This document shows positions 11,904 through 56,989 of a stretch of 64,000 nucleotides of DNA, in pieces. The DNA is from Dendrobates tinctorius. Its lineage: Eukaryota. Location: assembly GCF_039654945.1 (NCBI RefSeq), contig NW_027361788.1:5642001-5706000 (forward strand), written 5' to 3'. Positions within the stretch are counted from its first letter, which is position 1; every line of letters starts with the position of its first letter. Below the pieces are notes generated by a model that saw nothing but the letters and a program-made list of their open reading frames with translations, was not told the DNA's origin and ran no database searches. Both the position numbers and the translations under genes were made by a program.

Positions 11904-12934
11904 GTTCTAAATGTATGGCAAATAATGAACTTGTTATAAAGTCCGTTTTGAAGAAGTTTATCTGACAAGGGATGTATTTTGCTTTTATTTATTACAGTAG
12001 TTTCTGTTCTCTACTATCAAAAATTAACAACTAAAATGTGAGTAGGAAATGGAGGAAATTGTAATTTGTTCTCCTAAATCGATAGCAAATAGTGAACTTG
12101 TCGTAAAGTCAGTTTTGGAGATGTGTAATTTGAAGTTTATGTATTCTTGAAAACTCTCTCGCCCACTATCTTCACAGCAATTTGCCTTTTAGGAGACAAA
12201 CCTGGACCTTTTACTAATGCCACCTAAAAGTGATTCCAGCTTTTAAAATGTCTGCCCATCGCTTTAAGATTTGAAAAAATGTGGCAAGGATAAAGAGGGG
12301 TAAAAAAAAATTCTAAGTGAGGTTAAATGGTGAAAAAAAACATCAATTCCGCTGTTGGTTTTTGGATTTTGTTTCGTATTCATTGTTCAAGTGGTTGGAT
12401 ACTATCTTATTAACTCCTTTTTAATATCCACCTGGTAAAATAAAAATAACAGATACTAGCCTCTTGCATGCAAGGCCGCCATCAGGGCATGACAGCCCTT
12501 ACTGTTGTATGGGGCCCGGTGAACAGCAGTAGAGAAGGGGGCCCGCAGATCAGGGGCCCCGCTCCTGTGCTGCCAGTCATCGGGCCCCAAGTGCTGTGTG
12601 TCATCGGGCGCCGGTCGGGCCCCAAGTGTGCTCTGCGGTCGGGCCCCTAATGTGCGCTGCGGCCGAGTCTGCAGCGCACACATCAGCAGAGCAGCCACAG
12701 CGCCCGACATCCGAAAGTTAGAGAAGTGCTTAAGGACCTGTGGTGACGCTATCATTATCACAGGCCTTCAGCATTGATCAGCTCCGCCCCTTGATCACAT
12801 GACGATAACGTCACCACAGGTCCTTTCAGCTCACACAGCAGCAGCTCCATCTTCACTGCAGGAGCGAGGTCAGGTAAGAAGAAAGTTTTTGTTTTATTTT
12901 ATTATTGAAAGGGGCAATATGTTTCCCTGGCAGA

Positions 12935-14273: not shown

Positions 14274-15137
14274 TGTTAGTGTGGGTGGTCTGGAGCAGGA
14301 ACCTCCGGGAGTGGACCCTCTGGACCGTGGCACCGAGGGTCCCCGGGCGAGCTGCCAGGTGGAACCGACCCCTATACAGGGACCGTTAGGAGCAGGCCCA
14401 GGGGTTCGAGTACCACGGTAGCTGGTACCGAGAGGGGCGGCTCAGGATGGACCGGAGTAAGACTGAGACTGGAGTAGGACGGCAGGAACACTGAAGGCAG
14501 GACTGGAGTAGGACAGCAGGAACACTGAAGGCAGGACTGGAGTAGGACAGCAGGAACACTGAAGGCAGGACTGGAATAGGATGGCAGGAACACTGGAGGC
14601 TGGACTGGAGTAGGACAGCAGGAACACTGAAGGCAGGACTGGAGTAGGACGGCAGGAACACTGAAAGCAGGACTGGAGTAGGATGGCAGGAACACTGGAG
14701 GCAGGACTGTAGCAGGACGGCAGGAACACTGGAGACAGAACAAGGAACACGGGTAGCAGGACTGAGAAGCTGCTGGAAGGAGAAGCCGACACTGGAACTG
14801 CGGGAGCAGAGTGCACACGATGAAGCTAGGCCAGAGTGTTAGGAAACACAACGATCATGCGCCTCCCTCAGGGGGAAGCGGCCTGATATGGCCCCGTCTG
14901 GTCAGCCATTGGTCCAAAGGTGCTTCCGGGTCAGGGCACAGCCGGAGCATAAGAAGCAGGAGGGAGGCGCGGCCGAGGCCTATGGCGCTGCGCATAGCAT
15001 GCAGGGAAGGCATCGGTCGTGAGCCCGTCTCAGGTGACCGCCGCGGCCTTCGGGTGGAGAGAGGCTGCGGCGTGGGAGCGGAGACCGACTGCGGCGTGGG
15101 AGTGGAGGCCGGGTGAGTATGGCGGAGCGGTGTAACT
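14274..15137 (-). repeat. 3' LTR with internal 34-bp tandem repeat
   Basis: Direct repeat of 19372-20215. Confidence 0.95.
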
Positions 15138-15169
15138 GTACCCCTCCCTAAGCCGCCCTCCCCGGAGGT

Positions 15170-18100
15170 TAGCGAGAAACCTCCTGAGGATACGGGGAGC
15201 ATTGATATTCTCCTGAGGCTCCCAGGATCTCTCCTCAGGACCAAAACCCTTCCAATCAACAAGAAAGAAAGTCCTACCTCTAACCCTTTTCACAGCAAGA
15301 ATGTCCTGCACTTGAAAAATGTCGTCGGCACCCACCGGCTGAGGACCAGGATCAAGTGAGGAATGGAAGCGATTCAGCACCACAGGTTTCAGGAGAGAGA
15401 CATGGAAGGTGTTCGGGACCCGGAGCGAAGCAGGCAACCTCAATTTGTAGGCGACTTCATTGATACGTCCAAGAATTTCAAACAGACCGATGTAGCTTGG
15501 CCCCAACTTGTAGGAGGGCAGTTTCAACCGGATAAATTTGGATGAGAGCCAGACCTTGTCCCCAACACGATAGGGTGGAGGACCCAATCTCTTCTTGTCG
15601 GCAAAATTCTTCATCCGATCAGCGGACTTCTTGAGTGACGTGTTGGTCTCGGCCCAGATCTTGGAAAACTCGGAGGACAAAGCGTTGGCCGCGGGTACCT
15701 CGGAGGCAGGAGTTATCGGAAGAGGAACACCAGGATGTTTGCCAAAAACAATGAAAAATAGAGACTTGGCCGAAGACTCACTCTGCCCAGGGGAGTAAGT
15801 TGACCCAAGCATTCTGGTGGGCGTTGGAGAAGTGCCGTAAGTACCCCGTAAGCGTCTGGTTGGTACGCTCTACCTGTCCGTTGGACTGTGGATGGTAGGC
15901 CGAGGAGAAATCGAGGGAAACGTTCATGAGCTTACAAAGCGAACGCCAGAACTTGGAGGTAAACTGAACCCCTCGGTCAGACACAATGCGTCGAGGTAAT
16001 CCGTTAAGTCTGAAGATTCGACCAATTAAGATTTTGGCCAGCTCCGGCAATGAGGGAAGACCGGGAAAAGGGACGAAGTGAGCCATCTTGGAAAAACGAT
16101 CCACCACCACCAGGATGACTGTGCAGCCCACAGAGCAGGGTAGGTCGGTGATGAAATCCATGGCGATGTTCTCCCAAGGAACCGTAGGGACGGGTAATGG
16201 AAGCAACAAGCCGGACTGAGGTCTCCGTGGCACTTTGTTTCTTGCACAGGATGGACAAGAAGCCACAAAGTCGAGTACATCTTGGCGAAGCATGGACCAC
16301 CAGTAGTGACGCGTGATAAGATCAAGGGTCTTCTTAGTTCTGGCATGGCCGGCCACTTTGGAGGAGTGCCCCCATAGAAGAACCTTTTGCTTGAGATTCT
16401 CTGGCACAAGCGTCTTGCCAGGTGGGGGAGTAAGCCAGTTCACCGGAGCCATGGTGATGATCCTAGTGGGATCAATGATGGGCGAAGGTTCTTCCGTGGA
16501 TTCGTGTGGCTGGAAGACCCTGGACAGGGCGTCGGCTTTGGAATTCTTGTTGCCAGGACAGAATCGGAGCTCGAAATCAAATCGGGCGAAAAATAGGGAC
16601 CATCTGGCCTGGCGAGGGTTAAGTCTCTGGGCAGACTGGAGATAGGCCAGATTCTTGTGGTCCGAGTAGATGACAAAAGGATGGACAGCTCCTTCCAGGA
16701 GGTGGCGCCATTCCTCCAAGTTCAACTTGATGGCCAAAAGTTCCCGGTCGCCGATAGAGTAGTTATTCTCGGATGGAGAAAAGGCCTTCGAGAAGAAGCC
16801 ACAAGGGTGCAGGCGACCGGAGGCGGTTCTCTGGGACAGTACCGCCCCGGCACCCGTCGAGGAAGCGTCCACCTCGAGTACAAAAGGTCGATCGCTCTCA
16901 GGGCGATGCCGGACCGGAGCCGTGAAGAAAGCTCGTTTTATGGTCAGAAAGGCCTCCTCTGCCTCAGGAGACCAATCCTTGGAAGTAGACCCTTTACGGG
17001 TGAGTACAGAAATGGGTCTTGTGATCGCGGAGAAGTGGGAGACAAATTGCCGGTAATAGTTGGCGAACCCGAGGAATTGTTGTATCGCCTTTAATCCAAC
17101 GGGGCGAGGCCATTTGAGGATGGCAGACAACTTCTCGGGATCCATCCTTAGACCAGCGTCGGAGATAATGAATCCCAGAAACGGCAGAGAGGTCTGTTCA
17201 AAGAGACATTTCTCGATCTTCGCATACAGGCGGTTCTCCCGAAGACGCTGAAGCACCAGGCGGACACTCTTTCTGTGGGACGAGAGGTCCGGCGAGAAGA
17301 CGAGGATGTCGTCTAAGTACACGACCACACAGGAATACAAGAGATCCCGGAAGATCTCATTGACAAACTCTTGACCGAAGGGCATGACCAGGTACTCGTA
17401 ATGGCCATCTCGAGTGTTGAAAGCGGTCTTCCACTCATCACCTGCACCGATACGGACCAGGTTGTAGGCTCCTCTGAGGTCCAGCTTGGAAAAGACCCGA
17501 GCCCCTCTGAGACGGTCAAACAGCTCCGGAATGAGTGGAAGAGGGTACATGTTCTTGATCGTAATCTCATTCAAGCCCCTATAGTCAATGCATGGCCGTC
17601 GAGTTCCGTCCTTCTTTTTGATGAAGAAGAACCCGGCTCCCGCGGGTGAAGAGGATTTCCGTATAAAGCCTTTGGCGAGGTTCTCTCGGATGTACTCAGA
17701 CATGGCGGTGATCTCTGCGGGAGACAGAGGGTAGATTCTGCCCCTTGGAGGGGTTGAATCGGGAACAAATACAATTGGGCAGTCAAACGGGCGGTGTGGA
17801 GGGAGGACCTCCGCTTCCTTCTTATCAAAAACATTGGCGTAGGAGCTGTAAGCTGGAGGAAGATCCGGGAGGTCTGGAGGTGACCGAGGAGCGGCCGCCA
17901 GGCGGACAGGAGACGGACAGAGAGCTGGGCATGGGTGCCCCCAGCGGAGTATCTCCCCAGAAGACCGGTCGAGAACAGGCTGATGAGTCCTTAACCATGG
18001 AAGACCGAGTAGAATGGCGTGAGAGACCTTAGGTAAAACGTAAAAGGCTATCTTCTCTCGATGTAAGGCTCCGACTTGCAACTCCACCTCTTCAGTGACC

Positions 18101-18279
18101 AAGGTGACGGTCACCTGTAGCGGTTTGCCATCCACGGTGGCAATCTGAATTGGGTTAGATAGAGTGACTACAGGAATTTGGTATTTGTCCACCTCTTCCG
18201 GCCGAATGAAGTTACCCGCTGAGCCCGAATCCACGTAGGCCACCTCGGAACCACGCCTCCCTCCTGAAACCAAAAGCAC
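15170..18279 (-). pseudogene. pol: Pol polyprotein (PR, RT, RNase H, integrase, chromodomain); frameshift near 15790 and short RT deletion
   Basis: VDSGSAG; RPCIDYRGLN; YLDDIL; DASSTGAGAVL; H-x6-H...CPSC; AMDFI/SDRG/GQVER; FHVSLLKP; LVDWKGFGPEERSWEP. VMPFG runs straight into QEFVN, so the usual ~8-residue NAPA motif is missing. Confidence 0.95.
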
Positions 18280-18329
18280 AGAAATCGTAAGGGGTTGAGA
18301 GGGATCATCATCAGCTAGGAAGGCCTCTC

Positions 18330-19358
18330 TTACCTTACCAAGGAGGAGTCGTTTCCCAGTCTCTTAGGACAGGTGCGGATATAGAGGCACAGACCTTGTG
18401 CCTGTCTCCCTCTCTGACGCAACTCGGCCAACCTGAGACGATCTATCTGCATGGGCTCACCCGAAGAGAAGGAAGAGGGCCCGACCGAACGGGAGCTGGC
18501 AGACCGGGTGAAAGGAGAAACTGACCTGGAGGACCGCCTGTCTCTCGCTGACTCCCGAGCACGCTCCAGAAAGCGCAGATCAATGCAGGTAGCCAGCGAG
18601 ATAAGGTCCTCTAAGGTGGACGGGGTATCTCGACCTGCGAGTTTATCCTTTATTCTACTAGAAAGACCGCGCCAGAATGCCCCCACCAAAGCCACGTTAT
18701 TCCAGCCGAGCTCGGAGGAGACAGTGCAAAAGCGAATAGCGTACTGTCCGACCGTGAGAGAGCCCTGGTGTAAGTTAAAGAGTGACTCAGTAAGAGAGGC
18801 TAACCGACCCGGCTCATCGAAAACCTTACAAAACGTATCCAGGAAAACCGGGAGACTCGAGACGACCGGGTCGTCACGTTCCCAGAGCAGGTTTACCCAA
18901 GACAGGGCCTCTCCCTCCAGATGGGACATGATGAAGGCCACTTTGGCCCGATCCGAGGGATATTGCTGCTGAGGCAGCCATTCAAAATGGAGACTACACT
19001 GATTTAAGAACCCCCTACAGAGCTTGGGATCCCCGGTGAAACGTGGCGGCTTGGCGAGGCGGGGCGTCGGGAGAGCAGTAGACGCAGGAGGAGGAGTCGG
19101 CACTGCAGTGGCAGCCTGGAGGGCCGACAAGCGACTATCAAAGGAGGCCATATAGGACAAAATATGGGCTTGAGTATCTTGCTGCTGACCCAGCTCCTGT
19201 TGGAGACTGGCCAGCTGAGTGGCATTTCCAGGATCGGCCACCTGTAAAGCCGACAAACGGGTGTCCATTGACTTCATGACTGACATATTGCGCCCCTGAT
19301 TAACCCGTAGGAATAGCAACTCTTTCTGGGTAGCAGCCGTAGTACTGGCAGGGTCAAT
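18330..19358 (-). pseudogene. gag: Gag (PEG10/RTL1-like capsid); zinc knuckle partly deleted, probable ATG mutated to ATT
   Basis: PPRFTGDPKLCRGFLNQC, AKVAFIMSHLEGEALSW, LHQGSLTVGQY, EPMQID; CLY|IRTCP lacks the knuckle centre. Confidence 0.9.
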
Positions 19359-19371
19359 GGCCTCATCGTAC

Positions 19372-20215
19372 TGTTAGCGTGGGTGGTCTGGAGCAGGAAC
19401 CTCCGGGAGTGGACCCTCTGGACTGTGGCACCGAGGGTCCCTGGGCGAGCTGCCAGGTGGAACCGACCCCTATACAGGGACCGTTAGGAGCAGGCCCAGG
19501 GGTTCGAGTACCATGGTAGCCGGTACCGAGAGGGGCGGCTCAGGATGGACCGGAGTAAGACTGAGACTGGAGTAGGACGGCAGGAACACTGAAGGCAGGA
19601 CTGGAGTAGGACAGCAGGAACACTGAAGGCAGGACTGGAGTATGACAGCAGGAACACTGAAAGCAGGACTGGAGTAGGATGGCAGGAACACTGGAGGCTG
19701 GACTGGAGTAGGACAGCAGGAACACTGAAGGCAGGACTGGAACAGGATAGCAGGAACACTGAAAGCAGGACTGGAGTAGGATGGCAGGAACACTGGAGAC
19801 AGAACTGCGGAAGAGAACAAGGAACACGGGTAGCAGGACTGAGAAGCTGCTGGGAGGAGAAGCCGACACTGGAACTGCGGGAGCAGAGTGCACATGATGA
19901 AGCGAGGCCAGAGTTTTAGGAAACACAACGATCAGGCGCCTCCCTCAGGGGGAAGCGGCCTGATATGGCCCCGTCTGGTCAGCCATTGGTCCAAAGGTGC
20001 TTCCGGGTCAGGGCACAGCCGGAGCATAAGAAGCAGGAGGGAGGAGTGGCCGCGGCTTATGGCGCATGCGCATAGCATGCAGGGAAGGCATCGGTCGCGA
20101 GCCCGTCTCAGGTGACCGCCGCGGCCTTCGGGTGGAGAGAGGCTGCGGCGTGGGAGCGGAGACCGACTGCGGCGTGGGAGTGGAGGCCAGGTGAGTATGG
20201 CGGAGTGGTGTAACA
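19372..20215 (-). repeat. 5' LTR
   Basis: TGTTA...TAACA; direct repeat of 14274-15137. Confidence 0.95.
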
Positions 20216-20631
20216 ATGTGACGGTGAAACACAGGAAGGGGCAGAATGTGAGGCACGGGGACAGAATGTGACAGTAAGACACAGGAGGGGCAGAATGTGA
20301 CAGTGAGACACAGGATGGGGCAGTATGTGACAGTAAGGCTACTTTCACACTTGCTTTTTTTTGCAGCGCGTTTTTTGCGCCAAAAAAGCATGGAAAAAAC
20401 GCATACAAACGCTGCGTTTTTTTCAAGCATTTATGCGTTTTTTATGTGTTTGTATGCGTTTTTAGTGCGTTTGCGTTTTTTTCCACATTGTTTGTCCTCA
20501 CCCAAAAATAAAAACAAATAATAATCTGGCAACACACACAACCAATGGGACATCAGTGGCGGTGTGGTATGTTAATATATAGACCCTGTCTACAGTATTC
20601 TTCACATTTGCTTGAATGTTCTCGTGTCAAC

Positions 20632-22029
20632 ATGGATCTGCGCTGGAAGAGTTTTCACTTCAACTTGGATTTGGACATCGCGATGGCTCAGGCTTATGCA
20701 GTTGCTTGCCATGAACAAAGGAAGAGAGAGAGGCAGCGAAGACGGCAGTGGCGGCGTATGTGGATACATCCGATTGTTGAACTCCGGGAGAGCCGTGGGG
20801 CATACCACACCCTCTACAGTGAGCTACAGGCAAACCCGGAGAAATTTACAGATTATATCCGGATGTCCCAAGAAAGCTTCAGGGATTTGCTTGCTCGTGT
20901 CCAAGAATCCATCCGGAGACAGGACACACAGCTCCGTCGTGCGATTCCTCCTGAGGAACGGCTACTGGTGACATTACGGTACGTAATATTTAAAAACCAA
21001 GGGGTGGGGTCTGATGTTTTTTTTTACATGTACTATTCAAAACCTTGGCTGATTATTTTTCGTGAATGTACTAATATTTTATTTTATAGTTTTACAAAAC
21101 CATATACAGAAATATTAATTTTACTTCTTTCTCTGTTTCGCAGATTCCTGGCAACTGGAGAAACCCTATCTTCACTACACTTCCAGTACCGTATTGGAAT
21201 CTCTACCTTGTCTGGAATTGTTGTGGACACCTGCTGGGCTCTCTGGAATGTTCTTTGTCCAGAATTTATGCCCCTACCCACCGCTGAAAAGTGGATGGAA
21301 ATTGCTGACAAATTCTGGACAGTCTGCAATTTCCCCAACTGTTTGGGAGCTGTTGATGGTAAACACATACGGATCATCAAACCCAAAAGAACTGGATCTG
21401 AGTACTATAATTACAAAAAGTACTTTTCAATAGTACTCATGGCCATTGTGGATGCCGGATGTATGTTTGAAGCAGTGGACAATGGCTCATTTGGCCGTGG
21501 TAACGACTCACAGGCTTTTAAAAACTCAGACATGGGCCGGAGGTTGTATGGCAACCAATTTAATTTCCCTATGCCATGGCCTCTTCCTCACACCGAAGCT
21601 CCGCCACTGCCCTTTGTAATGGTTGGGGATGAGGCTTTTCAAATGTGCGCAAACTTACTGAAACCCTACTCCAGCCGGGACTTGGACCAAACCAAAAAAA
21701 TATTTAATTACAGGCTGACCAGGGCCAGAAGAACTGTCGAGTGTGCTTTTGGGATTCTTGTCTCCAGATGGCGAATTCTCGGCACAGCCAATAATCTTAA
21801 ACTTGAAACAGTCGTTGAGGTGGTGAAGGCGTGTGTGGTTCTACATAATTTTGTGATGGCTAAAGAGCACCCGACCTTTGAACTGGATGATGCTGCTCCT
21901 AACCCATTGCCTGAATTCACTCAGCACCCTCTCAGGTCATCCGTTGAAGTTGGCCAAATGAGGGACCAATTTGTGGCCTACTTTATCTCTGATGTAGGAC
22001 GGGTGCACTGGCAAGATGAAATGGTGTAA
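20632..22029 (+). CDS. Harbinger DDE transposase (HARBI1-like), 410 aa after splicing; exons 20632-20978 and 21144-22029
   Basis: GAVDGKH, YNYKKYFS, VGDEAF, FNYRLTRARRTVECAFGIL, ACVVLHN; GT..AG intron 20979-21143 restores VTLR/FLATG; AATAAA at ~22053 and ~22108. Confidence 0.92.
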   Translation: MDLRWKSFHFNLDLDIAMAQAYAVACHEQRKRERQRRRQWRRMWIHPIVELRESRGAYHTLYSELQANPEKFTDYIRMSQESFRDLLARVQESIRRQDTQLRRAIPPEERLLVTLRYVIFKNQGVGSDVFFYMYYSKPWLIIFRECTNILFYSFTKPYTEILILLLSLFRRFLATGETLSSLHFQYRIGISTLSGIVVDTCWALWNVLCPEFMPLPTAEKWMEIADKFWTVCNFPNCLGAVDGKHIRIIKPKRTGSEYYNYKKYFSIVLMAIVDAGCMFEAVDNGSFGRGNDSQAFKNSDMGRRLYGNQFNFPMPWPLPHTEAPPLPFVMVGDEAFQMCANLLKPYSSRDLDQTKKIFNYRLTRARRTVECAFGILVSRWRILGTANNLKLETVVEVVKACVVLHNFVMAKEHPTFELDDAAPNPLPEFTQHPLRSSVEVGQMRDQFVAYFISDVGRVHWQDEMV

Positions 22030-34600: not shown

Positions 34601-36070
34601 GCACTCTGAAATATTCTGAGACAGAGCAAAAAAAGAGGCCAATCTAATAAGGGACAAAAAGCAGATTGGCAAATACTGATTAATAGGAGTGGAATTTCAG
34701 TATAGCCCCAGCAGAGGCAGGCTGATTACACAAAAAACAGAATTGACCAACAAGAGCAAGTGAGAACATTAACAAAAAACAAACTTAACTTGAGAAGACT
34801 GGAAGAGAGCTGAAGTCCAGGACCTGAGAAGCAGACTGAATCACCAGCACCCGGATAGGGCGTCGGCTGTCTTATATCCAGTCTGATACTCCAGAGATCC
34901 AATCGCTATCTTCCTCATGAGGTGGCAGATCACTACCACTTAAACCAACCGCACTACCTCCTGTCACCTTTAGAGGGAGAACAGAAGGGGAACTCTCAAC
35001 TGGTGGAGCAGAAAATGAGTTCATCATAAGCATGAGCATCCCACTTATGCGTCATCTCATGCAAAGTTTGACGCACATTAAGGATCAGGCATCTGCAGAG
35101 GAGGAGGAATAGGAGGAGGAGGTGGAGGGAAGCCTTGATAACAGTAAGCCATTGTCTGGTCAGGGAACTGTCCTGGATGAGGTGGAGGAAGAAGAGGAAG
35201 AGGAGGATGAGAGGGATGATTATTTTGTGGAGGAGGATGCTTGTCAGGGGGCAAGAGAAAATGTTGGCGTGGCAAGGTCAGGTACAGGGCTTGTGCGTGA
35301 CAGGAGGGATGTGGATTTGCCAGAAAGTGCTCCTCCACCCACCACTGCCATTGCATTATTGACACCTGGAACATTGGCCCACATGTGTGATTATGCCTTG
35401 CGGATCCTAAAAAAGGACTCCTGCATTGCCAAAATGATGAAGGATGACGACTACTGGTTGGCCAGCATCCTCGATCCACGCTGTAAAGGAAAATTACACA
35501 ACATCATGCCACAGGAGAACCTAGAGATAATATTGGCTAACAAACAAGCAACTCTGGTAAACTGTTTGTTTGAGGCATTCCCAGCACACAGCAGCGGTGC
35601 TGGTTCTCCCACGAGCCGTAGTGGGCAAAATGGAAGAGGTATTCGTGGTGCACACAGCCGAAGTGGCGTTGGAGACAGGGGTTTCATGACCATGTTGTGG
35701 ACTGATTTCTCAAGTACCGCTCACACAACTGGTAATACTGCATCGATTGCAAGTGACAGGAGACAGCAGTTGTCAACTATGGTTACAAACTACTTCTCCC
35801 ATATCAATGTTCTCCCTCACAGGTCATTGTCCTTTGACTATTGGGCCTGTAAACTGGACACCTGGCCTGAATTAGCACAATATGCCTTACAGGAACTCGC
35901 TTGCCCTGCTGCTAGTGTGCTATCTGAAAGAGTCTTCAGTGCTGCTGGATCAATCCTGACAGAAAAAAGGACCGTCTGTTGACCCAAAATGTTGATGATC
36001 TAACCTTCATTAAAATGAACCATGCATGGGTTTTAAAGGATTTTGTCCCACCTTCCCCTGATGACACATA
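31684..36070 (+). pseudogene. BED-finger hAT transposase (ZBED-like), frameshifted and interrupted
   Basis: BED finger VWHFF...ICKKW...MLRHLTTMH; TTDAWS; VSDNG; CLAHTLNL; DVATRWNST; dimerisation domain WPELAQYAL..ACPAASVLSERVFS. Confidence 0.93.
34151..35021. mobile_element. Solo-LTR-like insertion in the hAT ORF
   Basis: Starts TGTTATGA; removing it restores DNAI|ISMSIPL; CCATC/TCATC flanks; right terminus degenerate. Confidence 0.7.
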
Positions 36071-37059: not shown

Positions 37060-38397
37060 GAGTCTGGACTGGCTTACTGAGACTGAAAAATATACGAAGA
37101 TTTCAAAGTACCCCAACAATGTATACGTGGTGTACGCTTCGAATACATTTCCCTTTTTCTACTTTTTATATTTAGCCTGTGAGTGTCTGTGTCTGACTCC
37201 GGAAATATAGACGGAAATTTACAATTACCCCTAGACTGGATACACCTGGTATCTGCTGATACAGTACCTTTGTTCTAAATGTTTTATTACGGCATAATCC
37301 ATACTGAGTGAGCGTGTGTGGTTTCTTCCTTCTGTATATAAAAATTTTACCCTATACTATATACAGCTTCTACTGTATCTTGTTATACAGTACCTTTGTT
37401 CAACATTTAGTATTACGGTCAAATCCATACTGAGAGAGCCTCTGAGGGTGACTACGGGAATATCTACACGGATATTTAAATTGTACCCTATATATATACC
37501 TGCTATCTTGTTATCCAGTACCTTTTTTCAACATTTTGTATTATGGTCAAATCCAGACTGAGTGAGCGTCTGAGGGTGACTCCGGAAATATATACCGAGA
37601 TTTCAAATTTGCCCAACACTGTATACAGCTCTACGCTTCTGATACAGTACCCTTTTTTGCTATTTAGATTCTGGTGTAATCCATAATGAGCCTGTGAACG
37701 TCTGTCTGTTACTCCGAAAATATATTTGGAGATTTAAGATTACACCAACACTGTATACAGCTGTACGCTTGTGATACATTACCCATTTACTGCTTTTTAT
37801 ATTCTGGTATAATCCATACTGAGCCAGTGAGAGTCTGTTTCTGACTATGGAAATATATATGGAGATTTACAATGCCCCTATAGTGTATACAGCTGTACGC
37901 TTCTGATCCATTACCCTTTTACTGCTTTTTATATTGTGGTGTAATCCATACTGGGCCTGAGAGCATCTGTGTCTGCCTCCTCAAATATATACTGAGATTT
38001 AGAATGTTTAAACTATACTATATATACCTATTATCTGCTGATACTGTACCCTTTGTCAAATTTCTATATTCTTGTCGAATCCATACTGGGCCTGAGAGCG
38101 TCTGTGTCTGCCTCCGGAAATACATACGGATATTTTTTCTACTTTCACTAAACTATATATACCTTGTATCTGATACAGTACCCTTTGAGCCAGAAAGTCC
38201 TCCTCCACCCACCACTCTAAGTGCATCATTGACACCTGGAACATTGGCCCACATGTGTGATTATTTCTTGCAGATCTTCTTTTTGTATTATGGTTTGATC
38301 CATACTGATCCTGTGAGAGTCTGTGTGTTACTCATTAAATATATATGTAGATTTAAAAATTACACTAACACTGTATACAGCTGTATGCTTGTGATAC
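37060..38397. repeat. Degenerate ~130-bp tandem array (continues 41518-41815)
   Basis: ATCCATACTGAG and ATACAGCTGTACGCTT recur; related to the 30060-31680 array. Confidence 0.82.
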
Positions 38398-39290
38398 TGT
38401 TAGGAACGGCAGAACGCACTTATTAAAAATAATAATAAAGTGTGTTCGTCGCTCGGGGTCCACCGTGCAGTGGATGATATGACTGCTGCTAAGTGGTGGC
38501 AGGCAAGCAATATGGCGGAAATGCGCACGTGGATAAAAACGTCACCCAGGTGCGCAGAGCAATCTCTGTTAAGTCACAGAGGTGCCAACAAAGACAAATA
38601 CAATAAGGCTGAGCCTGTTGGAGTCACAGTACTCAGAGTAAATGCACACATGGTATCTGGTCACAGGAGCAGAGCCAAAGACAGCGGAACTGCGTCCGTC
38701 TAGACCTACCGTGCGTGCGACGTCGCAACTGCGGACGCCAAGGAGGGCTGCAACTGCAGTGCAGTGTAGGACACTGCCGCTAGACGACAAAGCTAGTACG
38801 CAAGCTCAATGTCGGATGCTAGCAACTGTGGATGATGTAGTAGTGGCGCGCTGGTGCTGACTCTAAGCTTAGTACCTGTCCACATACGTAATATCAGAGG
38901 GAAGGGGTTTCAAATGAGTCATTCACCAGAATCATACATCCATCATCATTCACACAGTAGCAACTAGAGACTATACTAGTGCAAGGCGGAACGGCCATAC
39001 GCGCTTTTTATAGCCGTCGGGACCTTCCGGAAGCTTCCAGATCTCTGAGATGGACCAATGAGATCTGGCACAGGACCTGAGCACATGACTCCCGATCTCC
39101 ATTGGGAAATCGTCTCATGAGCATGCTCAGTAGGAGGACAGAGGGACTTAGCCCCTGGAGAGATTTGCTGCAAGGCAATCTCCTCTGCAGTAGATAAACA
39201 GCAAGAGACCGCAGAATGTAAGGGTCTGGATTCCTGCAGAGCAGACGCAGAAACCTGACGCCTAACATTACCCCCCCTCCTAGGGCCTCC

Positions 39291-40616
39291 TCATCCCTGA
39301 GCCTTCCGATCCACCACCTTGTGCCCATCAGGGGCATAGGCCTCAGACCCATCCGAAGGCAAGTCTGATGTCCCAGTAGGTGACATGGAAAACCGGGACA
39401 CGTGGAAGGCATCAGAGGCGGCAAGGTCGCCAGGTTTGAGAAGGGAAGCGTGGGAGACAACGGGGGCGGCAAAATCGCCAGGAGCAGAAGCTGAAGTGGA
39501 ACGCCGCAGTGTGTCGGCTGGTGTCTCCACTCTCTGTTTAAGGAAGCTATTCCGAGCACAAAAAGCGCAGGCCCGAATATTCTTTTTAATGTCCCGAGCC
39601 CTGTGCTGCCACCAATACGACCCCGCCAGGAGTTTTGTGGTCTGCATGTAGCCACAGTGACCACCCCTCCTGGAGGAGTGTGCCCACGCGAGAACCCTCG
39701 GCCGAAGGCGGGGAGGGACAAAGGTCTTGCCCGGTGGCACAGAGTTTAGCCATTGCGGGGCACTGTTGTCCTGAGAAACAGCATGTTGACAATGGTAACC
39801 GCGAATGGAGTTTTGTGCCGGACGCGCCTCGAGAACGGCGCGAGACACCTCCATGGGCTCTGGAAGTGGAGTCTCTGGCTCGGGTGGTTCCAGAGGCTCA
39901 AAAAAGTTGTGAGTCGAGGTAACCTTACGTTTGGATTGAGCACGCTCCAGGCCGCGCTCCGAAAAACGGAGATCAATGCGGGTGGAAATGGCAATCAGCT
40001 CTTCCAAACTTGCATGAACTTCTCTGGTGGAGAGAGCATCCTTAACATGCTCCACCAAACCTCTCCAAAGCACAGGGATGAGGGCTTTGTCAGACCACTC
40101 CAGCTCGGAAGCCAGTGTCCGAAAATGAATGGCATACTGACTAACCGAGAGGAATCCCAGAGTCAAAGCAAGTAGCTGAAGAGAGGTGTCGTGCGTGACC
40201 CGTGGTCCCACGAAGACCTGCTTAATAGCTGTTAAAAACTGAGCAGTGGTCCGAACCTCTGGGTCACCACGCTCCCATAGTGGCGTAGCCCACTCCAACG
40301 CCTTGCCCGACAGAAGGGAAACAATAAACCCCACCTTGGCCCGTTCTGTAGGGAATCTCGCAGCCAGTAACTCCAGCTGGATAGAGCACTGGTGGATGAA
40401 ACCCCTACAGGAGGCACCATCGGCAGAAAATTTATCTGGCAACGGGAGGCGGGTAACTGTCGGCGCGTGGGAGGACGTGGACATACGTGAAATCGCGTCT
40501 GCGATTGCCTGTGCAGCAGCTTCAGTGGATTTCGCAGCTAAGATAGTACTCTCAAAAGTAGCCAACCGGCCCTCCAGCTGCCAAATATACTGTAAGATTT
40601 GCTGCTGTTCTGCCAT
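39291..40616 (-). CDS. gag: Gag capsid fused in frame to the integrase H2C2 zinc-binding domain (441 aa)
   Basis: LPDKF...CRGFIHQC, AKVGFIVSLLSGKALEW, EPMEV; then VPPGKTFVP...H-x6-H-x29-C-x2-C; tail with HASLLKP and FHVS remnants. Confidence 0.88.
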   Translation of the reverse strand: MAEQQQILQYIWQLEGRLATFESTILAAKSTEAAAQAIADAISRMSTSSHAPTVTRLPLPDKFSADGASCRGFIHQCSIQLELLAARFPTERAKVGFIVSLLSGKALEWATPLWERGDPEVRTTAQFLTAIKQVFVGPRVTHDTSLQLLALTLGFLSVSQYAIHFRTLASELEWSDKALIPVLWRGLVEHVKDALSTREVHASLEELIAISTRIDLRFSERGLERAQSKRKVTSTHNFFEPLEPPEPETPLPEPMEVSRAVLEARPAQNSIRGYHCQHAVSQDNSAPQWLNSVPPGKTFVPPRLRPRVLAWAHSSRRGGHCGYMQTTKLLAGSYWWQHRARDIKKNIRACAFCARNSFLKQRVETPADTLRRSTSASAPGDFAAPVVSHASLLKPGDLAASDAFHVSRFSMSPTGTSDLPSDGSEAYAPDGHKVVDRKAQG

Positions 40617-40632
40617 CACTAGCCAGACCCTG

Positions 40633-40643
40633 GCGCTAGTATA
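40633..40643 (-). promoter_or_regulatory. Putative self-priming primer-binding site
   Basis: Minus-strand TATACTAGCGC next to the 5' LTR is complementary (10/11) to the LTR sequence starting 29-30 nt downstream of the TATA box. Confidence 0.75.
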
Positions 40644-41250
40644 ATGTTAGGAACGGCGGAACGCACTAAATAAAAATAATAATAAAGTGCGTTTGCCGCT
40701 CGGGGTCCACCGTGCAGTAGATGATATGGCTGCTGCTAAGTGGTGGCAGGCAAGCAATATGGCGGAAATGTGCACGTGGGTTAAACGTCACCCAGGTGCG
40801 CAGAGCAATCTCTGTTAAGTCACAGAGGTGCCAACAAAGACAAATACAATAAGGCTGAGCCTGTTGGAGTCACAGTACTCAGAGTAAATGCACACACGAT
40901 ATCTGGTCACAGGAGCAGAGCCAAAGACAGCGGAACTGCGTCCGTCTAGACCTACCGTGCATGCGACGTCGCAACTGGGGACGCCAAGGAGGGCTGCAAC
41001 TGCAGCGCGGCGTAGGACACTGCCGCTAGACGACAAAGCTAGTACGCAAGCACAATGTCGGATGCTAGCAACTGTGGATGATGTAGTAGTGGCGCGCTGG
41101 CGCTGACTCTAAGCTTAGTCCCTGTCCACATACGTAATATCAGAGGGAAGGGGTTTCAAATGAGTCATTCACCAGAATCATACATCCATCATCATTCACA
41201 CAGTAGCAACTAGAGACTATACTAGAGCATGGCGGAACGGCCATACGCGC

Positions 41251-41257
41251 TTTTATA
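41251..41257 (-). promoter_or_regulatory. LTR TATA box
   Basis: TATAAAA in both LTRs (also 39005-39012). Confidence 0.7.
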
Positions 41258-41785
41258 GCCGCCGGGACCTTCAGGAAGCTTCCAGATCTCCGAGATGGAC
41301 CAATGAGATCTGGAGCAGGACCTGAGCACATGACTCCCAATCTCCAATAGGAAATCATCTCATGAGCATGCTCAGTAGGAGGACAGAGGGACTTAGCCCC
41401 TGGAGAGATTTGCTGCAAGGCAATCTCCTCTGCAGTAGATAAACAGCAAGAGACCGCAGAATGTAAGGGTCTGGATTCCTGCAGAGCAGACGCAGAAACC
41501 TGACGCCTAACAGATACATTACCCACTAACAGCTTTTAATATTCTTGTCTAATCCATACTGGGCCTGAGAGCGTTTGTGTCTGCCTCCTGAAATATATAT
41601 GGAGATTCAGAATGTTTAAACTATACTATATATGCCTTGCATCTGGTGATACTGTACCCTTTTTCAACTTTTCATATTATTGTGTAATCCATACTGAGCC
41701 TGTGAGCATCTGTGTATGACTCATGAAATATATACGGAGATTTACAATTATCCCTAGACTGTATAGAGCTGTACACTTCTGATAC

Positions 41786-42253
41786 AGTACCATATATCTG
41801 CTGGTATGTTGGGTACATTTTCACAAAAATTAGTAAGTATGGTGGAAGAGGCCGCAGACGTGGGCGTGGGGGGCCAGCTGGTACTGATGGTGGTGGTGGT
41901 GCATCTGCTGGTAGTGCCAAAAGCACAATAGCAGCTAAGGAAGGAGGTGTTGAGCCTGCGTCATGGTCTGGCTCCGGAAGGCCTGTAAGGCTCCCTTTTC
42001 TGGGAGTAGGTAAACTGCTTTTAAAGCCGGAGCATCAGGAACTGGTTTTGCCTTACATTGCTGAAACAGTCTCCAGCTCTATCGCCTCCTCTTCTGAAGT
42101 TTCAAAAAATGCAAGCACTCAGTTGTCAGTGCAGGCTTCTGGTCAGGAGCAACACCTTTCCTTGGGTCCTTCACCCACACCAAAAGTGAAGGATGCGGCA
42201 GCCCACACTTCAGATTTCTCCATGGAGCTCTTTTCACATACCATGCCTGGGTT
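41786..42253 (+). pseudogene. Second, diverged copy of the 5' end of the hAT ORF
   Basis: Matches 31640-32105; ATG mutated; ends at SHTMPG. Confidence 0.9.
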
Positions 42254-54474: not shown

Positions 54475-56989
54475 CATATCTAATGTTCGCCATCCGCAAG
54501 GTACCGCAGGCGTCCATGGTGTTCTCCCCATTTGAGCTATTGTATGGCAGGCACCCAAGGGGACTGCTGGACATAGCCAAGGAGACGTGGGAACAGGAGC
54601 CCATGCCGCATAAGAATGTTATCGTGCATGTGGCAAGCATGCAGGACCGGATTGCTGCAGTACGGCCCATAGTGAAGGAGCATCTGATGGATGCCCAGGC
54701 CGAGCAGAGCGGCGTGTATAATAAAAGAGCCACGGCCAGGACCTTTAAAGAAAAGGAACGGGTGTTGGTACTAGTGCCCACCACAGAGAGTAAGCTCATG
54801 GCCAAGTGGCAAGGGCCATATGAGATACGGGGAAAGGTGGGAGATGTAAATTATAGAGTTTACCAGCCCAGGAAAAGAAAACCTGAACAGCTGCATCACG
54901 TCAACCTGTTGAAAGTGTGGAAGGACTGGGAATGTTTGGCCGCGGAGGCAACCTCAGTGGTACCAACAAGGAACCCTCTGTCACCGGCCAAGGACGAGGC
55001 CAAGAGAGAGGTAAAAATAGGAGACACCATCTCAAAACAGCAGCGTCGAGAGGTTTGGAAATTAGTCCAAGAGAATGCAGATGTATTCTCAGAATTACCC
55101 GTTCATACCTCCGTCATCCAGCATGACATTGTCACCAAGCCTCATGTAAGGGTACAAATGAAACCATATCAGGTGCCCGAGGCCCGGAGATTGCGTGTGA
55201 GGTAAGACAAATACTCCAGCTGGGAATAATTGAGGAATTCTGGAGTGACTGGGCCTCACTGTGCTAATCCTGAAGCCAGACGAATCATTACGGTTCTGTA
55301 ATGATTTCCGTAAGTTGAATGAGATGTCGAAGTTTGACCTTTATTCAATGCCCCTGGTGGACGAGTTGATCGAGCGCCAGGGTCAGGCCCAGTACTTCAC
55401 CATGCTAGACCTAACCAAGGGTTATTGACAGGTGCCTCTTACAGCGTCGGAAAAGGAAAAGACCTAGTGCTGGAACCCCATCGGAAGTATACATCAGCGT
55501 ACTTAGATGACATCATCATCTTTAGTGATGACTGGCATACCCACTTGTCCCATGTACAAGTGGTAGTAGATTCGCTCAGAGCCACGGGCTTGACAGCGAA
55601 TCCCAAGAAATGTGCGATAGGGCTCGAGGAAGCCTGATACTTGGATTACGTGATTGGCCGTGGGGTTATCAAACCTCAAATAAATAAAACTGAGGCCATT
55701 CAGAACTGGCCCCAACCTGTTACCACCAAACAGGTGAGAGCATTTCTCGGAATCGTTGGGTATTACCAGAGGTTTATACCTAATTTTTCAGGAAGAACAA
55801 CCCCCTTACTGATCTCCTCAAGTGAAAGAAGTCGGTCATGGTTCGGTGGAACCCCAAGGCGGAGGAAGCGTACCAATCTATGAAGGTGGCGCTGTGTGGA
55901 CAGCCCATCCACATTATCCCCAGCTTTCAGAAATGCTTCATTGTGCTGATAGATGCCTCTAACGAGGGCCTAGGAGTTGTCCTGTCGCAGGAGGTGAACG
56001 GAGAGAAGCATTCGGTCACTTACCTAAGAAGGAAACTCACCCCGGCCTAGAAAAATTATAGCGTAGTGGAGAAGTGCCTAGCCATTAAATGGGCCTTGGA
56101 GTCCCTAAGCAATTATTTCCTTGGTCGACCATTTCGCTTGGTGACAGATCATCCTCTCTTAGTCTGGATAAGGAATTCCAAGGAGAGGAATGCTTGGGTC
56201 ACCTTCCTGTCTTTGCAAAATTTCAATTTTACCGTGGAACATCGGGCTGGAAAGTCACAGGGAAATGCGGATGCCCTGTCACGGACCCCCTGTATGGTGA
56301 CAAATGTTCAACCCCACAAGTTTTAACAGGGAGGTATGTGAGGCAGTGACCGGGGTCATATGCGAGGGTTACTATGTGCGCAAAGAGGCATATTGAAAAA
56401 CCTACCATGGGCTTTATTTTTTAAGCGGACTACAGGAGGGTAGTGGGGCGGTCCGTTTCCTCCCCCGGCCGGGGTTTTCCATGTGGTCTACGACCACAGG
56501 TTCTTTGTAAAAAAAAAAAAAAAAAAAAAATGAAAACCCTGAAGCAGAGCGTTGGATGTGTCAGTGTGGAATTTGCAAGGTGCAGATCACATGGCTCTGC
56601 AAAAGCTCAGCCTGTGTGAGGGAACACAGCACCAAGCAGAGTGAACTCCTGGCACCCCGCATCCTATTATGGTGGTGCAGTCGCCCTGAGCAACCAGACG
56701 CATTTACGGACTGTCTTGTTTCCCAGCTGTCTTTCCTGGGTCACTGCCTCATCACAGCACTGTGAGGTCACAGCTGCAGTACAGGCACAAATTGGCATTA
56801 TTTTTGAGTGGGGGGCAAAGAAAGAGTAATATTATTGTGTTGGGCACAAATTGTCATTATTATTGTGTGGGAGCACAAATTGTCATTATTATTGCATGAG
56901 GGCACAAAGTTGCATTATTATTGTGTGGCTACACAGAGGGGCCCTACTGCTGTGTGGAGGAATAAAGAAGGGTACATTGTTAGTTCTTA

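What the first reader, a model, noticed from the sequence alone, without database searches (positions are those of the whole stretch)
38398..41512. Mobilised mini-retrotransposon encoding only a Gag capsid fused to an integrase zinc finger
Seen: two LTRs, a perfect GATAC TSD and a PPT. One open 441-aa ORF fills the whole interior: capsid, decayed nucleocapsid knuckle (GYHCQHAVSQDNSAP), intact integrase H-x6-H-x29-C-x2-C, then two remnants of the IN C-terminal FHVSLLKP motif. PR, RT, RNase H, the IN catalytic core and the chromodomain are absent, yet the frame is kept across all junctions although the LTRs already differ by a few percent (estimated by eye). Known: gag-only non-autonomous LTR elements exist, and the IN N-terminal domain mediates multimerisation. 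Inference: this is a parasitic element family that transposed in this form. The HHCC finger may replace the lost knuckle for RNA binding, or may dock onto or interfere with helper integrase.
Basis: partly seen in the sequence, partly recalled or inferred. Interest (0 to 1): 0.75.

Follow-up and report, generated by a model that had tools for sequence, protein, structure and literature searches.

The report
Gag-plus-zinc-finger mini retrotransposon family
This is a small frog jumping gene that lost its copying enzymes but kept a shell protein fused to an integrase zinc finger; two more copies in a poison-frog genome show that it spread in this stripped-down form by borrowing enzymes from complete relatives.

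Summary
Window 38398-41512 (minus strand) is a 3,115-bp LTR element. It has 870/868-bp TG..CA LTRs that differ by 3.7%, a perfect 5-bp TSD in a 132-bp satellite, a PPT, and one 441-codon ORF. The ORF encodes a Ty3-type capsid, a decayed CCHC knuckle, an intact integrase HHCC domain and a disordered tail made of integrase C-terminal scraps.

The main inference is supported. Two further copies in Dendrobates tinctorius sit at other loci. One has its own TSD (GGTGG) and LTRs only ~1% apart. Both carry the same junctions and the same rearranged tail, at 84% and 70% DNA identity to the window copy. dN/dS between copies is 0.10-0.25 for the capsid and 0.13-0.23 for HHCC. The three copies form one gag clade beside full-length Ranitomeya imitator chromoviruses, which share their LTR ends, PPT and a Tf1/sushi-type self-priming site.

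It is therefore a non-autonomous, TR-GAG-like chromovirus derivative, presumably mobilised in trans. What the HHCC domain does is untested. Gag-encoding non-autonomous LTR elements are known in plants, and an in-frame gag-pol fusion is known in mouse IAP 1-delta-1. I call this a new variant of a known kind, of moderate interest.

The parts
38393..38397 (.). Target-site duplication GATAC, left copy
   Evidence: Satellite units elsewhere read TGTGATACATTACCC, which serves as an empty site.
38398..39267 (-). 3' LTR in element orientation, 870 bp, TG..CA
   Evidence: 96.3% identical to the other LTR.
39268..39280 (-). Polypurine tract GGAGGGGGGGTAA abutting the 3' LTR. The purine-rich run extends to about 39300 and overlaps the end of the ORF.
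   Evidence: Near-identical in L001, L004 and the autonomous relative L003.
39291..40616 (-). Single ORF of 441 codons plus stop, the Gag-HHCC fusion protein
40482..40613 (-). N-terminal long helix (residues 2-45)
   Evidence: AF2 model, pLDDT above 90 over most of it.
39921..40454 (-). Ty3/PEG10-type capsid, NTD plus CTD (residues 55-232)
   Evidence: Pfam. AF2 pLDDT above 90. Foldseek: PEG10 CA-CTD with TM 0.93 and rmsd 1.1, Ty3 capsid with TM 0.70. dN/dS 0.10-0.25.
39759..39800 (-). Decayed CCHC nucleocapsid knuckle (residues 273-286). Only the second Cys is kept.
   Evidence: Gap-free positional match to the intact knuckle of P0003. Predicted disordered.
39531..39731 (-). Integrase N-terminal HHCC zinc-binding domain (residues 296-362), ligands H-x6-H-x29-C-x2-C
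   Evidence: Pfam PF17921, E 1.9e-13. AF2 pLDDT 90-96. Superposes on the PFV and Ty3 integrase NTD at rmsd 1.0-1.5 over 57-59 residues. dN/dS 0.13-0.23.
39294..39530 (-). Tail (residues 363-441): start of the IN C-terminal region (ADTxRR), rearranged FHVSLLKP/RFSES segment, first strand of the chromodomain, then the end of the pol ORF over the PPT. The SH3 barrel and the rest of the chromodomain are absent.
   Evidence: Mapping to P0011, P0173 and P0174. Predicted disordered. dN/dS 0.52-0.62.
40633..40643 (-). Primer-binding site of the self-priming type, TATACTAGCGC, one base after the 5' LTR. It is not complementary to a tRNA 3' end.
   Evidence: Complementary to 41218-41228.
41218..41228 (-). 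Putative first 11 nt of the transcript, GCTCTAGTATA, about 30 nt downstream of TATAAAA (41251-41257). Pairs with the PBS in 10 of 11 positions.
   Evidence: Read directly. The match is 11/11 in L004 and L003, and the last pair covaries (A-T versus T-A). The MFE and centroid folds pair the 5' end with the PBS.
40651..40701 (-). Conserved U5 stem-loop next to the PBS
   Evidence: RNAalifold on 8 LTR ends: 18 pairs, 4 with compensatory changes.
40645..41512 (-). 5' LTR in element orientation, 868 bp
41513..41517 (.). Target-site duplication GATAC, right copy

Best explanation
This is one copy of a non-autonomous LTR retrotransposon family. The family descends from a Tf1/sushi-type chromovirus (Ty3/gypsy) of dendrobatid frogs through four in-frame internal losses: (1) PR-RT-RNase H, (2) the integrase catalytic core, (3) the integrase SH3 barrel, and (4) most of the chromodomain.

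Shown:
- The element keeps all cis signals: LTR ends, a TATA-driven transcript start, a self-priming PBS with an adjacent U5 hairpin, and a PPT.
- It keeps one ORF for a capsid-forming Gag fused to the integrase HHCC domain.
- The family transposed repeatedly in this deleted form.
- The ORF, including HHCC in the window/L001 lineage, was held by purifying selection during that spread.

Inferred:
- RT, RNase H, protease and integrase are supplied in trans by a related full-length chromovirus that shares the same LTR termini, PBS and PPT.
- The element's own Gag-HHCC protein helps its RNA into particles, a cis advantage like that of the mouse IAP 1-delta-1 gag-pol fusion.
- The Gag-tethered HHCC domain, which in intasomes contacts the catalytic core of a partner integrase and the DNA ends, most likely gives the parasite access to helper integrase or to nucleic acid.
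For: - Anatomy and TSD.
- Domains and fold.
- Second and third copies with the same junctions at other loci: P0001/L001 and L004. L004 has TSD GGTGG and about 1% LTR divergence.
- Between-copy DNA identity is 84% and 70%, against 96-99% LTR identity within copies.
- dN/dS: overall 0.25-0.38, capsid 0.10-0.25, HHCC 0.13-0.23, at dS up to 0.9.
- Gag tree: the three copies form one clade (98/97), sister to the full-length-type R. imitator clade.
- All three copies share the rearranged tail (..VSHxSLLKPGDLxxxxAFHVSR..). This is a rearrangement rather than a clean excision of the autonomous sequence, so recurrent splicing is an unlikely source.
- Collinear mapping onto full-length relatives P0011, P0173 and P0174.
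- PPT, LTR termini and PBS are shared with the autonomous relative L003.
- Self-priming complementarity with covariation. Self-priming is documented for Tf1/sushi elements of yeast and vertebrates (PMC6317226).
- Analogues: IAP 1-delta-1 (PMC6466679), TR-GAG (PMC4350172), Quinta/Cereba (PMC11302176).
Against: - Only three copies could be reached, from one or two species. Two were found because gene models annotate them, which biases the sample towards open frames.
- No intact autonomous partner from the same genome is in hand. The nearest full-length relatives are R. imitator copies only 56-61% identical in protein and themselves defective.
- The L004 copy is young, yet its gag frame is broken near codon 139/140. 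This is a post-insertion or assembly change, or gag is not needed in cis.
- HHCC non-synonymous change on the L004 branch is about three times that of gag (0.24 versus 0.08), so its constraint is not uniform.
- Template switching with co-packaged helper RNA could refresh gag or HHCC segments and mimic selection in the deleted form.
- There is no expression or protein evidence for the window copy.
Confidence: 0.78

Rival explanations
1. A once-complete chromovirus inserted here and lost its pol domains afterwards through local deletions. On this view the open frame is luck and no deleted family exists.
For: A single copy with 3.7% LTR divergence keeps its ORF by chance in about 12% of simulations. 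Each in-frame junction has a one-in-three chance.
Against: The same four junctions and the same rearranged tail occur in L001 and L004, at unrelated loci and with an independent TSD. Between-copy divergence is far greater than within-copy LTR divergence. dN/dS is well below 1.
Confidence: 0.02
2. The deleted form is generated again and again from autonomous masters, for example by reverse transcription of a spliced or template-switched RNA. The copies would then share junctions without forming a self-propagating lineage, and the low dN/dS would reflect selection on the autonomous parents.
For: Many other in-frame internally deleted chromovirus ORFs exist in databases: gag plus full IN (P0139, P0040), gag plus PR plus HHCC (P0002, P0053), and gag plus an RH fragment plus HHCC plus a chromo fragment (P0052). 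So such deletions arise often. No autonomous elements from D. tinctorius were sampled, so the gag clade could be a sampling effect.
Against: Four separate losses plus a non-collinear rearrangement of the FHVSLLKP region are shared by all three copies. The decayed knuckle is shared while a relative keeps it intact. The three copies are monophyletic with 98/97 support. Linker and tail sequences align across the junctions at dS about 0.9.
Confidence: 0.1
3. The Gag-HHCC ORF is a host-domesticated gene, like PEG10, RTL, Arc or Gin-type genes, rather than a transposon gene.
For: Purifying selection. NCBI models annotate P0001 as a protein, and annotate L004's ORF as the N-terminus of MFAP2 isoforms X1/X2.
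Against: Each copy is framed by LTRs with PBS and PPT and, where testable, a TSD. The copies lie at unrelated loci inside tandem repeats or introns. LTR divergence of 1-4% shows recent insertion.
Confidence: 0.03
4. The element is a defective interfering parasite. Gag-HHCC co-assembles with helper Gag-Pol and poisons helper integrase multimerisation, damping the autonomous family, rather than aiding its own spread.
For: An isolated IN N-terminal domain without a catalytic core could occupy partner-binding sites (inference from intasome architecture, PDB 3oy9 and 7q5b, matched). The full-length relatives found are all defective.
Against: Selection at the element level favours transmission, and young copies exist (L004, about 1% LTR divergence). 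Interference and self-benefit are not exclusive. There is no functional data either way.
Confidence: 0.07

Closest known systems
[quoted passage not shown] 2015, PMC4350172)
   Same: Under 4 kb, with LTRs, PBS and PPT, a single ORF encoding Gag, and no enzymatic pol domains. Judged still mobile and dependent on helpers.
   Different: TR-GAGs were described in plants. The ORF here is a Gag fused in frame to an integrase HHCC domain plus integrase C-terminal scraps. The host is a frog, and priming is of the Tf1/sushi self-priming type.
RLG_Quinta / RLG_Cereba pair of Triticeae, and the 'semi-autonomous' Sabrina/WHAM elements (PMC11302176)
   Same: A non-autonomous chromovirus derivative that keeps an intact Gag ORF plus one extra domain. 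It shares LTR termini, PBS and PPT with an autonomous partner and persists as a long-lived lineage.
   Different: Quinta's extra domain is of unknown origin (DUF1), whereas here it is clearly the integrase N-terminal zinc domain. The partner is identified in wheat but not here.
Mouse IAP 1-delta-1 proviruses (review PMC6466679)
   Same: [quoted passage not shown] The element is non-autonomous and needs Gag and Pol in trans. The fusion protein is reported to act in cis to promote retrotransposition, which is the mechanistic model proposed here.
   Different: IAP is a class II endogenous retrovirus with a single 1.9-kb deletion. Here a chromovirus has four losses that leave only capsid plus HHCC. 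The cis effect is untested here.
Tf1/sushi group chromoviruses (Tf1, sushi-ichi; self-priming noted in PMC6317226)
   Same: Ty3-type capsid, HHCC integrase domain, single gag-pol frame in the relatives, 5-bp TSD, and an 11-nt complementarity between transcript start and PBS in place of a tRNA site. The closest full-length relatives carry a chromodomain.
   Different: Lacks PR, RT, RNase H, integrase core, SH3 and chromodomain, so it is a derivative and not an autonomous member.
TRIM / LARD non-coding LTR derivatives
   Same: Non-autonomous, LTR-bounded and mobilised in trans.
   Different: Those have no conserved coding capacity. This family keeps a selected 441-codon ORF.

Membership tests
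LTR retrotransposon (structural definition) | Two direct LTRs with TG..CA ends, flanked by a short target-site duplication | tested here: met
   5-bp GATAC TSD, with an empty site inferred from satellite paralogues.
LTR retrotransposon (structural definition) | PBS next to the 5' LTR and PPT next to the 3' LTR | tested here: met
   PPT GGAGGGGGGGTAA. The PBS is not tRNA-like but of the self-priming type.
Ty3/gypsy chromovirus, Tf1/sushi group (autonomous member) | Ty3-type capsid Gag | tested here: met
   Pfam PF03732 and PF19259. Foldseek hits to PEG10 and Ty3 capsids.
Ty3/gypsy chromovirus, Tf1/sushi group (autonomous member) | Pol with PR, RT, RNase H and integrase core in the order PR-RT-RH-IN | tested here: not met
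   No such Pfam domains. The mapping shows them deleted. It is a derivative, not an autonomous member.
Ty3/gypsy chromovirus, Tf1/sushi group (autonomous member) | Chromodomain at the integrase C-terminus | tested here: not met
   Only the first strand remains (EAYAPDGHKVVDRK against EFEVNAIVGCKVVRGK). The closest full-length relatives P0011 and P0174 have it.
Ty3/gypsy chromovirus, Tf1/sushi group (autonomous member) | Self-priming: the first ~11 nt of the transcript are complementary to the PBS | tested here: met
   10/11 in the window and 11/11 in L004 and L003, about 30 nt after the TATA box, with one covarying pair. The transcript start itself was not mapped.
TR-GAG (PMC4350172) | Non-autonomous LTR element shorter than 4 kb | tested here: met
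   3,115 bp.
TR-GAG (PMC4350172) | One ORF that encodes only the GAG precursor | tested here: inconclusive
   There is one ORF and Gag is present, but the ORF also encodes an integrase HHCC domain under selection. It fits the concept but not the letter of the definition.
TR-GAG (PMC4350172) | Signs of continued mobility despite lacking enzymes | tested here: met
   Independent insertions with 1-4% LTR divergence and distinct TSDs.
Autonomous / non-autonomous partner pair (criteria used in PMC11302176) | Identical or near-identical PBS, LTR termini and PPT in an autonomous partner of the same genome | tested here: inconclusive
   These are shared with the full-length-type L003 of R. imitator. 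That is another species, and the copy is defective. No partner from the same genome was available.
Integrase N-terminal HHCC domain (PF17921) | His, His, Cys, Cys ligands with canonical spacing in a three-helix fold | tested here: met
   H-x6-H-x29-C-x2-C, with the ligands kept in all three copies. Pfam E 1.9e-13. Model superposes on the PFV and Ty3 IN NTD at rmsd 1.0-1.5. Zinc binding itself was not tested.
Domesticated gag genes (PEG10, RTL, Arc, PNMA) | Single-copy syntenic host gene without LTRs | tested here: not met
   LTR-flanked copies at three unrelated loci.
IAP 1-delta-1-type fusion element | The fusion protein promotes retrotransposition of its own RNA in cis | not testable with these tools
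   Needs a cell assay. Only purifying selection on the fusion ORF is shown.

The most novel reading that the evidence does not exclude
On this reading the Gag-HHCC fusion is an adaptation of a parasite of a parasite, not a leftover. The capsid protein carries the integrase N-terminal zinc domain into the particle. There the domain docks on the helper's integrase core or on the cDNA ends. This would give the enzyme-less element privileged access to borrowed integrase and make up for its lost nucleocapsid knuckle. It would be a vertebrate chromovirus counterpart of the cis-acting IAP 1-delta-1 fusion.
Probability: 0.25. Interest if true: 0.65.

Novelty: new variant of a known kind. Interest (0 to 1): 0.5.

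Why it matters
Non-autonomous LTR elements that keep Gag are well described in plants (TR-GAG, Quinta, Sabrina). One in-frame gag-pol fusion is known to act in cis in mouse IAP.

This family shows the same strategy in a vertebrate chromovirus lineage, with a defined extra module: an isolated integrase zinc domain that selection kept while every catalytic domain was lost. That makes a specific question testable: what can an integrase N-terminal domain do on its own when tethered to a capsid protein?

The family also offers a natural system for studying competition between helper and parasite retrotransposons in the very large, TE-rich dendrobatid genomes. A practical point follows for annotation. 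These ORFs are picked up as 'uncharacterized protein' and as spurious N-terminal extensions of host genes (MFAP2 isoforms X1/X2).

Tried and rejected
- Parent in the window: the other chromovirus at about 14274-20214 (-) is only 39-42% identical in protein and shows no DNA similarity, so it is a different family.
- tRNA-type PBS: the site does not start with TGG. The window has no tRNA genes and no Rfam family matches the region. A self-priming reading was adopted instead.
- More copies: a metagenome scan found nothing. The bacterial, viral, phage and plasmid collections cannot hold frog DNA and were not scanned. Two word searches from the window ORF and the representative search returned only P0001 and P0010 with this architecture; a third word search, from P0011's gag, was aimed at full-length relatives. 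Copy number is therefore unknown.
- P0010 had no gene record. The longer isoform P0161 gave the locus.
- P0162 in the same 90% cluster is ordinary MFAP2, not transposon-derived.
- My own recalled analogy to BARE-2 as a 'gag-only' element was wrong. The cited title is 'Life without GAG', so I replaced it with TR-GAG.
- Exact DNA breakpoints, microhomology and splice signals could not be determined, because the nearest full-length relative is only about 68% identical in DNA.
- The source species of the window was not determined. The closest relatives are from D. tinctorius and R. imitator. Nothing suggests human sequence, and the window contains no N runs.
Full report
**1. What is there**

The interval 38398-41512 is a complete LTR element on the minus strand.
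- The two LTRs are 38398-39267 (870 bp) and 40645-41512 (868 bp). Both begin TGTTAGG and end CCTAACA.
- They differ by 32 substitutions and two single-base gaps, which is 3.7% (K2P 0.038). Thirteen of the 21 transitions lie at CpG, as expected for methylated vertebrate DNA.
- GATAC flanks both ends.
- The element sits in a 132-bp satellite. Other units of that satellite read ..GCTTGTGATACATTACCC.., which is exactly what the two flanks give once the element and one GATAC are removed. The TSD is therefore backed by paralogous empty sites.
- The interior is 1,377 bp.
- On the minus strand, GGAGGGGGGGTAA abuts the 3' LTR (the PPT). One ORF (39291-40616, 441 codons from the ATG) starts 28 nt after the 5' LTR and ends in the purine-rich run leading to the PPT.
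- The window has no N runs, and nothing in it looks human.

**2. The protein**

Pfam finds Retrotrans_gag/Ty3_capsid at residues 65-213 and Integrase_H2C2 at 300-356 (E 1.9e-13). It finds nothing for PR, RT, RNase H, rve, SH3 or chromo.

An AlphaFold2 model, built on a 53-row alignment of natural sequences, gives five regions:
- a long N-terminal helix (residues 2-45);
- a confident two-lobed capsid (60-232, pLDDT above 90);
- a disordered linker (250-286);
- a confident small helical domain (296-362, pLDDT 90-96);
- a disordered tail (368-441).

Foldseek matches the capsid to the PEG10 CA C-terminal domain (TM 0.93, rmsd 1.1 A), the Ty3 capsid (TM 0.70), dArc and PNMA2. It matches the small domain to the N-terminal domain of PFV integrase and of Ty3 integrase in its intasome (57-59 residues, rmsd 1.0-1.5 A). 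Sequence search of the PDB agrees. The ligand spacing H-x6-H-x29-C-x2-C is exact.

**3. What was lost**

The closest full-length-type relatives are gene-model fragments of Ranitomeya imitator chromoviruses: P0011/L003, P0173 and P0174. They are 56-61% identical to the window protein in gag and 61-65% in HHCC. Against them the window ORF is collinear, as follows.
- Residues 1-288 match gag through the nucleocapsid knuckle.
- Residues 286-362 match the stretch just before and through HHCC. PR, RT and RNase H are missing between these two blocks.
- The rve core is then missing.
- ADTLRR.. is the start of the integrase C-terminal region, and the SH3 barrel is missing.
- VVSHASLLKP and DAFHVSRFSMSPTGTS correspond to a rearranged TFHVSLLKPVHLSRFSESSAGTS.
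- EAYAPDGHKVVDRK corresponds to EFEVNAIVGCKVVRGK, the first chromodomain strand. The rest of the chromodomain is missing.
- KAQG.. corresponds to the end of the pol ORF (SEAQGGG) over the PPT.

The knuckle call is confirmed. R. imitator P0003 has an intact CHLCQQTGHLASRC at the same gap-free offset from the SRA anchor, and the window keeps only the second Cys. The knuckle is also decayed in P0173 and P0174.

**4. Is it a family that moved in this form?**

Yes, on the evidence reachable here.
- P0001 (XP_073425377.1, 'uncharacterized protein', Dendrobates tinctorius, 438 aa) is 79-80% identical over the full length with the same architecture.
- Its locus, L001, holds an element at 5613-8114 inside a VWA-rich gene. 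It has a 3' LTR, PPT and PBS, and a 5'-truncated 5' LTR. It is 84% identical in DNA to the window element, and the flanks are unrelated.
- A region-limited search found P0010/P0161, the MFAP2 isoforms X2/X1 of D. tinctorius. Their first 210 residues are the linker, HHCC and tail at 51% identity.
- That locus, L004, holds a complete element at 14508-17439. Its 794/793-bp LTRs are about 1% apart, it has a perfect TSD GGTGG in a 48-56-bp tandem array, and it is 70% identical in DNA to the window element. Its gag frame is broken near codon 139/140, while the remainder is open and runs into the 3' LTR.
- All three copies share every junction and the odd tail arrangement.
- Between-copy divergence (16-30%) greatly exceeds LTR-LTR divergence within copies (1-4%). 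The deletions therefore predate the insertions, so post-insertion decay and segmental duplication are both excluded.
- In a gag tree the three copies form a clade (98/97), sister to the R. imitator full-length-type clade (99/96); the two together have 100/100 support.

**5. Selection**

Nei-Gojobori dN/dS was computed with bootstrap intervals, reading L004 in two pieces with an X at the break.

| Segment | window vs L001 | window vs L004 |
|---|---|---|
| dS, whole ORF | 0.28 | 0.93 |
| Overall | 0.38 | 0.25 |
| Capsid | 0.25 | 0.10 |
| HHCC | 0.13 (CI 0.05-0.34) | 0.18 (CI 0.08-0.42) |
| Linker | 0.54 | 0.44 |
| Tail | 0.62 | 0.52 (CI 0.31-0.91) |

- Part of each distance is neutral decay after insertion, so constraint during the active phase was stronger than these ratios suggest.
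- High synonymous divergence in HHCC argues against a purely nucleotide-level constraint there.
- One nuance: with L003 as outgroup, HHCC non-synonymous change on the L004 branch is 0.24 against 0.08 for gag. On the window and L001 branches it is 0.03-0.04. HHCC is tightly kept in the window/L001 lineage and relaxed in the L004 lineage, although the four ligands persist.
- The open frame of the window copy alone is weak evidence. In simulations using its own LTR divergence, the ORF survives in 12% of runs.

**6. Cis elements and the likely helper**

- The sequence after the 5' LTR does not start with TGG. No tRNA gene lies in the window and no Rfam family matches the region.
- Instead, the 11-mer TATACTAGCGC, one base after the LTR, is complementary to GCTCTAGTATA in 10 of 11 positions. 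That sequence lies about 30 nt downstream of the LTR's TATAAAA, which is the expected transcript start.
- In L004 and in the autonomous relative L003 the match is 11/11 (GCGCTAGTATT with AATACTAGCGC), so the last pair covaries.
- The chance of such a match in an 868-nt LTR is about 0.007 (my own calculation).
- The MFE and centroid folds of the predicted R-U5-PBS RNA pair the 5' end with this site.
- This is the Tf1/sushi self-priming arrangement, reported for yeast and vertebrate members of that group (PMC6317226).
- A U5 hairpin next to the PBS is conserved with four compensatory pairs.
- The PPT with its upstream GGCTCA(A/G)GGA..GGGGGCC(C/T)TAGGAGGGGGGGTAA, the LTR start TGTTAGG and the LTR end (C/G)TAACA are shared with L003.
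- The deleted family therefore keeps what a related full-length chromovirus's RT, RNase H and integrase would need.
- The actual partner in the same genome was not found. The other chromovirus in the window (about 14274-20214) belongs to a different family.

**7. How it most likely works**

Shown: this is an enzyme-less, LTR-bounded element that inserted repeatedly, with its Gag-HHCC ORF under purifying selection.

Inferred:
- The transcript starts in the 5' LTR and is translated into Gag-HHCC.
- That protein assembles, alone or with helper Gag/Gag-Pol, around its own RNA.
- The helper's RT/RNase H uses the self-primer and the PPT, and the helper's integrase uses the shared LTR ends.

The HHCC domain contacts a partner integrase core and DNA ends in solved intasomes. 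When tethered to Gag it is best explained as a device to capture helper integrase or nucleic acid. The mouse IAP 1-delta-1 gag-pol fusion, reported to act in cis (PMC6466679), is the closest functional precedent. Interference with the helper is a live alternative.

**8. Comparison and novelty**

By structure this is a TR-GAG-like element (PMC4350172). It is also analogous to Quinta/Cereba and Sabrina/WHAM (PMC11302176), and to sugar-beet families that retain partial POL domains (PMC13570524).

It differs from these in three ways: the host is a frog, the lineage is a self-priming Tf1/sushi-type chromovirus, and a selected integrase N-terminal domain is fused to Gag.

Searches of the open literature library found no description of such a Gag-HHCC family, but that library is incomplete.

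In-frame internally deleted chromovirus ORFs of other compositions are common in protein databases, which tempers the surprise. I rate it a new variant of a known kind, interest about 0.5.

**9. Limits**

- Only three copies were reached, two of them found through gene models.
- Copy number, the helper and expression are all unknown.
- Recurrent origin and recombination with helpers are not fully excluded.

The broken L004 gag was read only in pieces or with an X at the break, and no repair is described.

Noticed in passing
window 37562-38187 and 41513-41800; L001 8115-8319; L004 13576-14507 and 17440-17710: All three copies of the family sit in or directly against tandem arrays (132-bp, 44/91-bp and 48-56-bp units). 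Arrays cover about 16% of the sampled DNA, giving roughly P = 0.004 for three of three. This would fit heterochromatin targeting by a chromodomain-bearing helper integrase, but n is only 3.
   Followed up: partly
window 40651-40701 (minus strand), and the equivalent LTR ends of L001, L004 and L003: A conserved stem-loop with an AT-rich loop lies at the U5 end, next to the self-priming PBS. Four base pairs show compensatory changes across non-autonomous copies and the autonomous relative.
   Followed up: partly
L004 15835-16887 (D. tinctorius JAYMGB010000010.1): NCBI gene models MFAP2 isoform X1/X2 (XP_073426350/1) start inside this transposon copy. Their first 210 residues are its linker, HHCC and tail read through into the 3' LTR. 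This is either a chimeric transcript or an annotation artefact.
   Followed up: partly
L004 about 15740-15745: A copy with LTRs only about 1% diverged has its gag frame broken near codon 139/140. This could be a post-insertion change or an assembly error, or it could mean that gag is dispensable in cis.
   Followed up: no
L001 5200-5613: The 5' LTR of the L001 copy lacks roughly its first 400+ bp (U3 with the TATA box). The 438-codon ORF is nevertheless intact and annotated as a protein.
   Followed up: no
window about 14274-20214 (minus strand): A second, near-complete chromovirus of another family. Its LTRs are about 860 bp and 96-98% identical, with 34-bp internal tandem repeats. It has a gag ORF (18330-19319), a PR-RT-RH-IN ORF (15778-18279) and an SH3-chromodomain ORF (15030-15812), so its frame is interrupted.
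   Followed up: partly
window 20545-22029 (+); 35122-35982 (+); 54483-55205 (+): Other transposon ORFs: a PIF/Harbinger DDE transposase, a hAT C-terminal dimerisation domain, and an integrase SH3/p58-C fragment.
   Followed up: no
proteins P0002/P0167/P0168 (locus L002, Logan SRR5149504), P0053, P0139/P0163 (Nothobranchius furzeri), P0040, P0052: Other in-frame, internally deleted chromovirus ORFs occur in public data: gag-CCHC-PR-HHCC, gag fused to a full integrase with chromodomain, and gag plus an RH fragment plus HHCC plus a chromo fragment. Such gag-to-integrase fusions seem to arise repeatedly in vertebrates.
   Followed up: partly
window ORF residues 379-384 (about 39465-39482): The window copy has six extra residues (in-frame, 18 bp) in the tail that L001 and L004 lack. 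They resemble the PGDLAA a few codons downstream, so they may be a small duplication.
   Followed up: no
window 12853-14260 (minus strand): Two long overlapping ORFs (440 and 452 aa) with no Pfam match lie in a GC-rich block of 20-bp and 41-bp tandem repeats. They are probably repeat-generated open frames.
   Followed up: no
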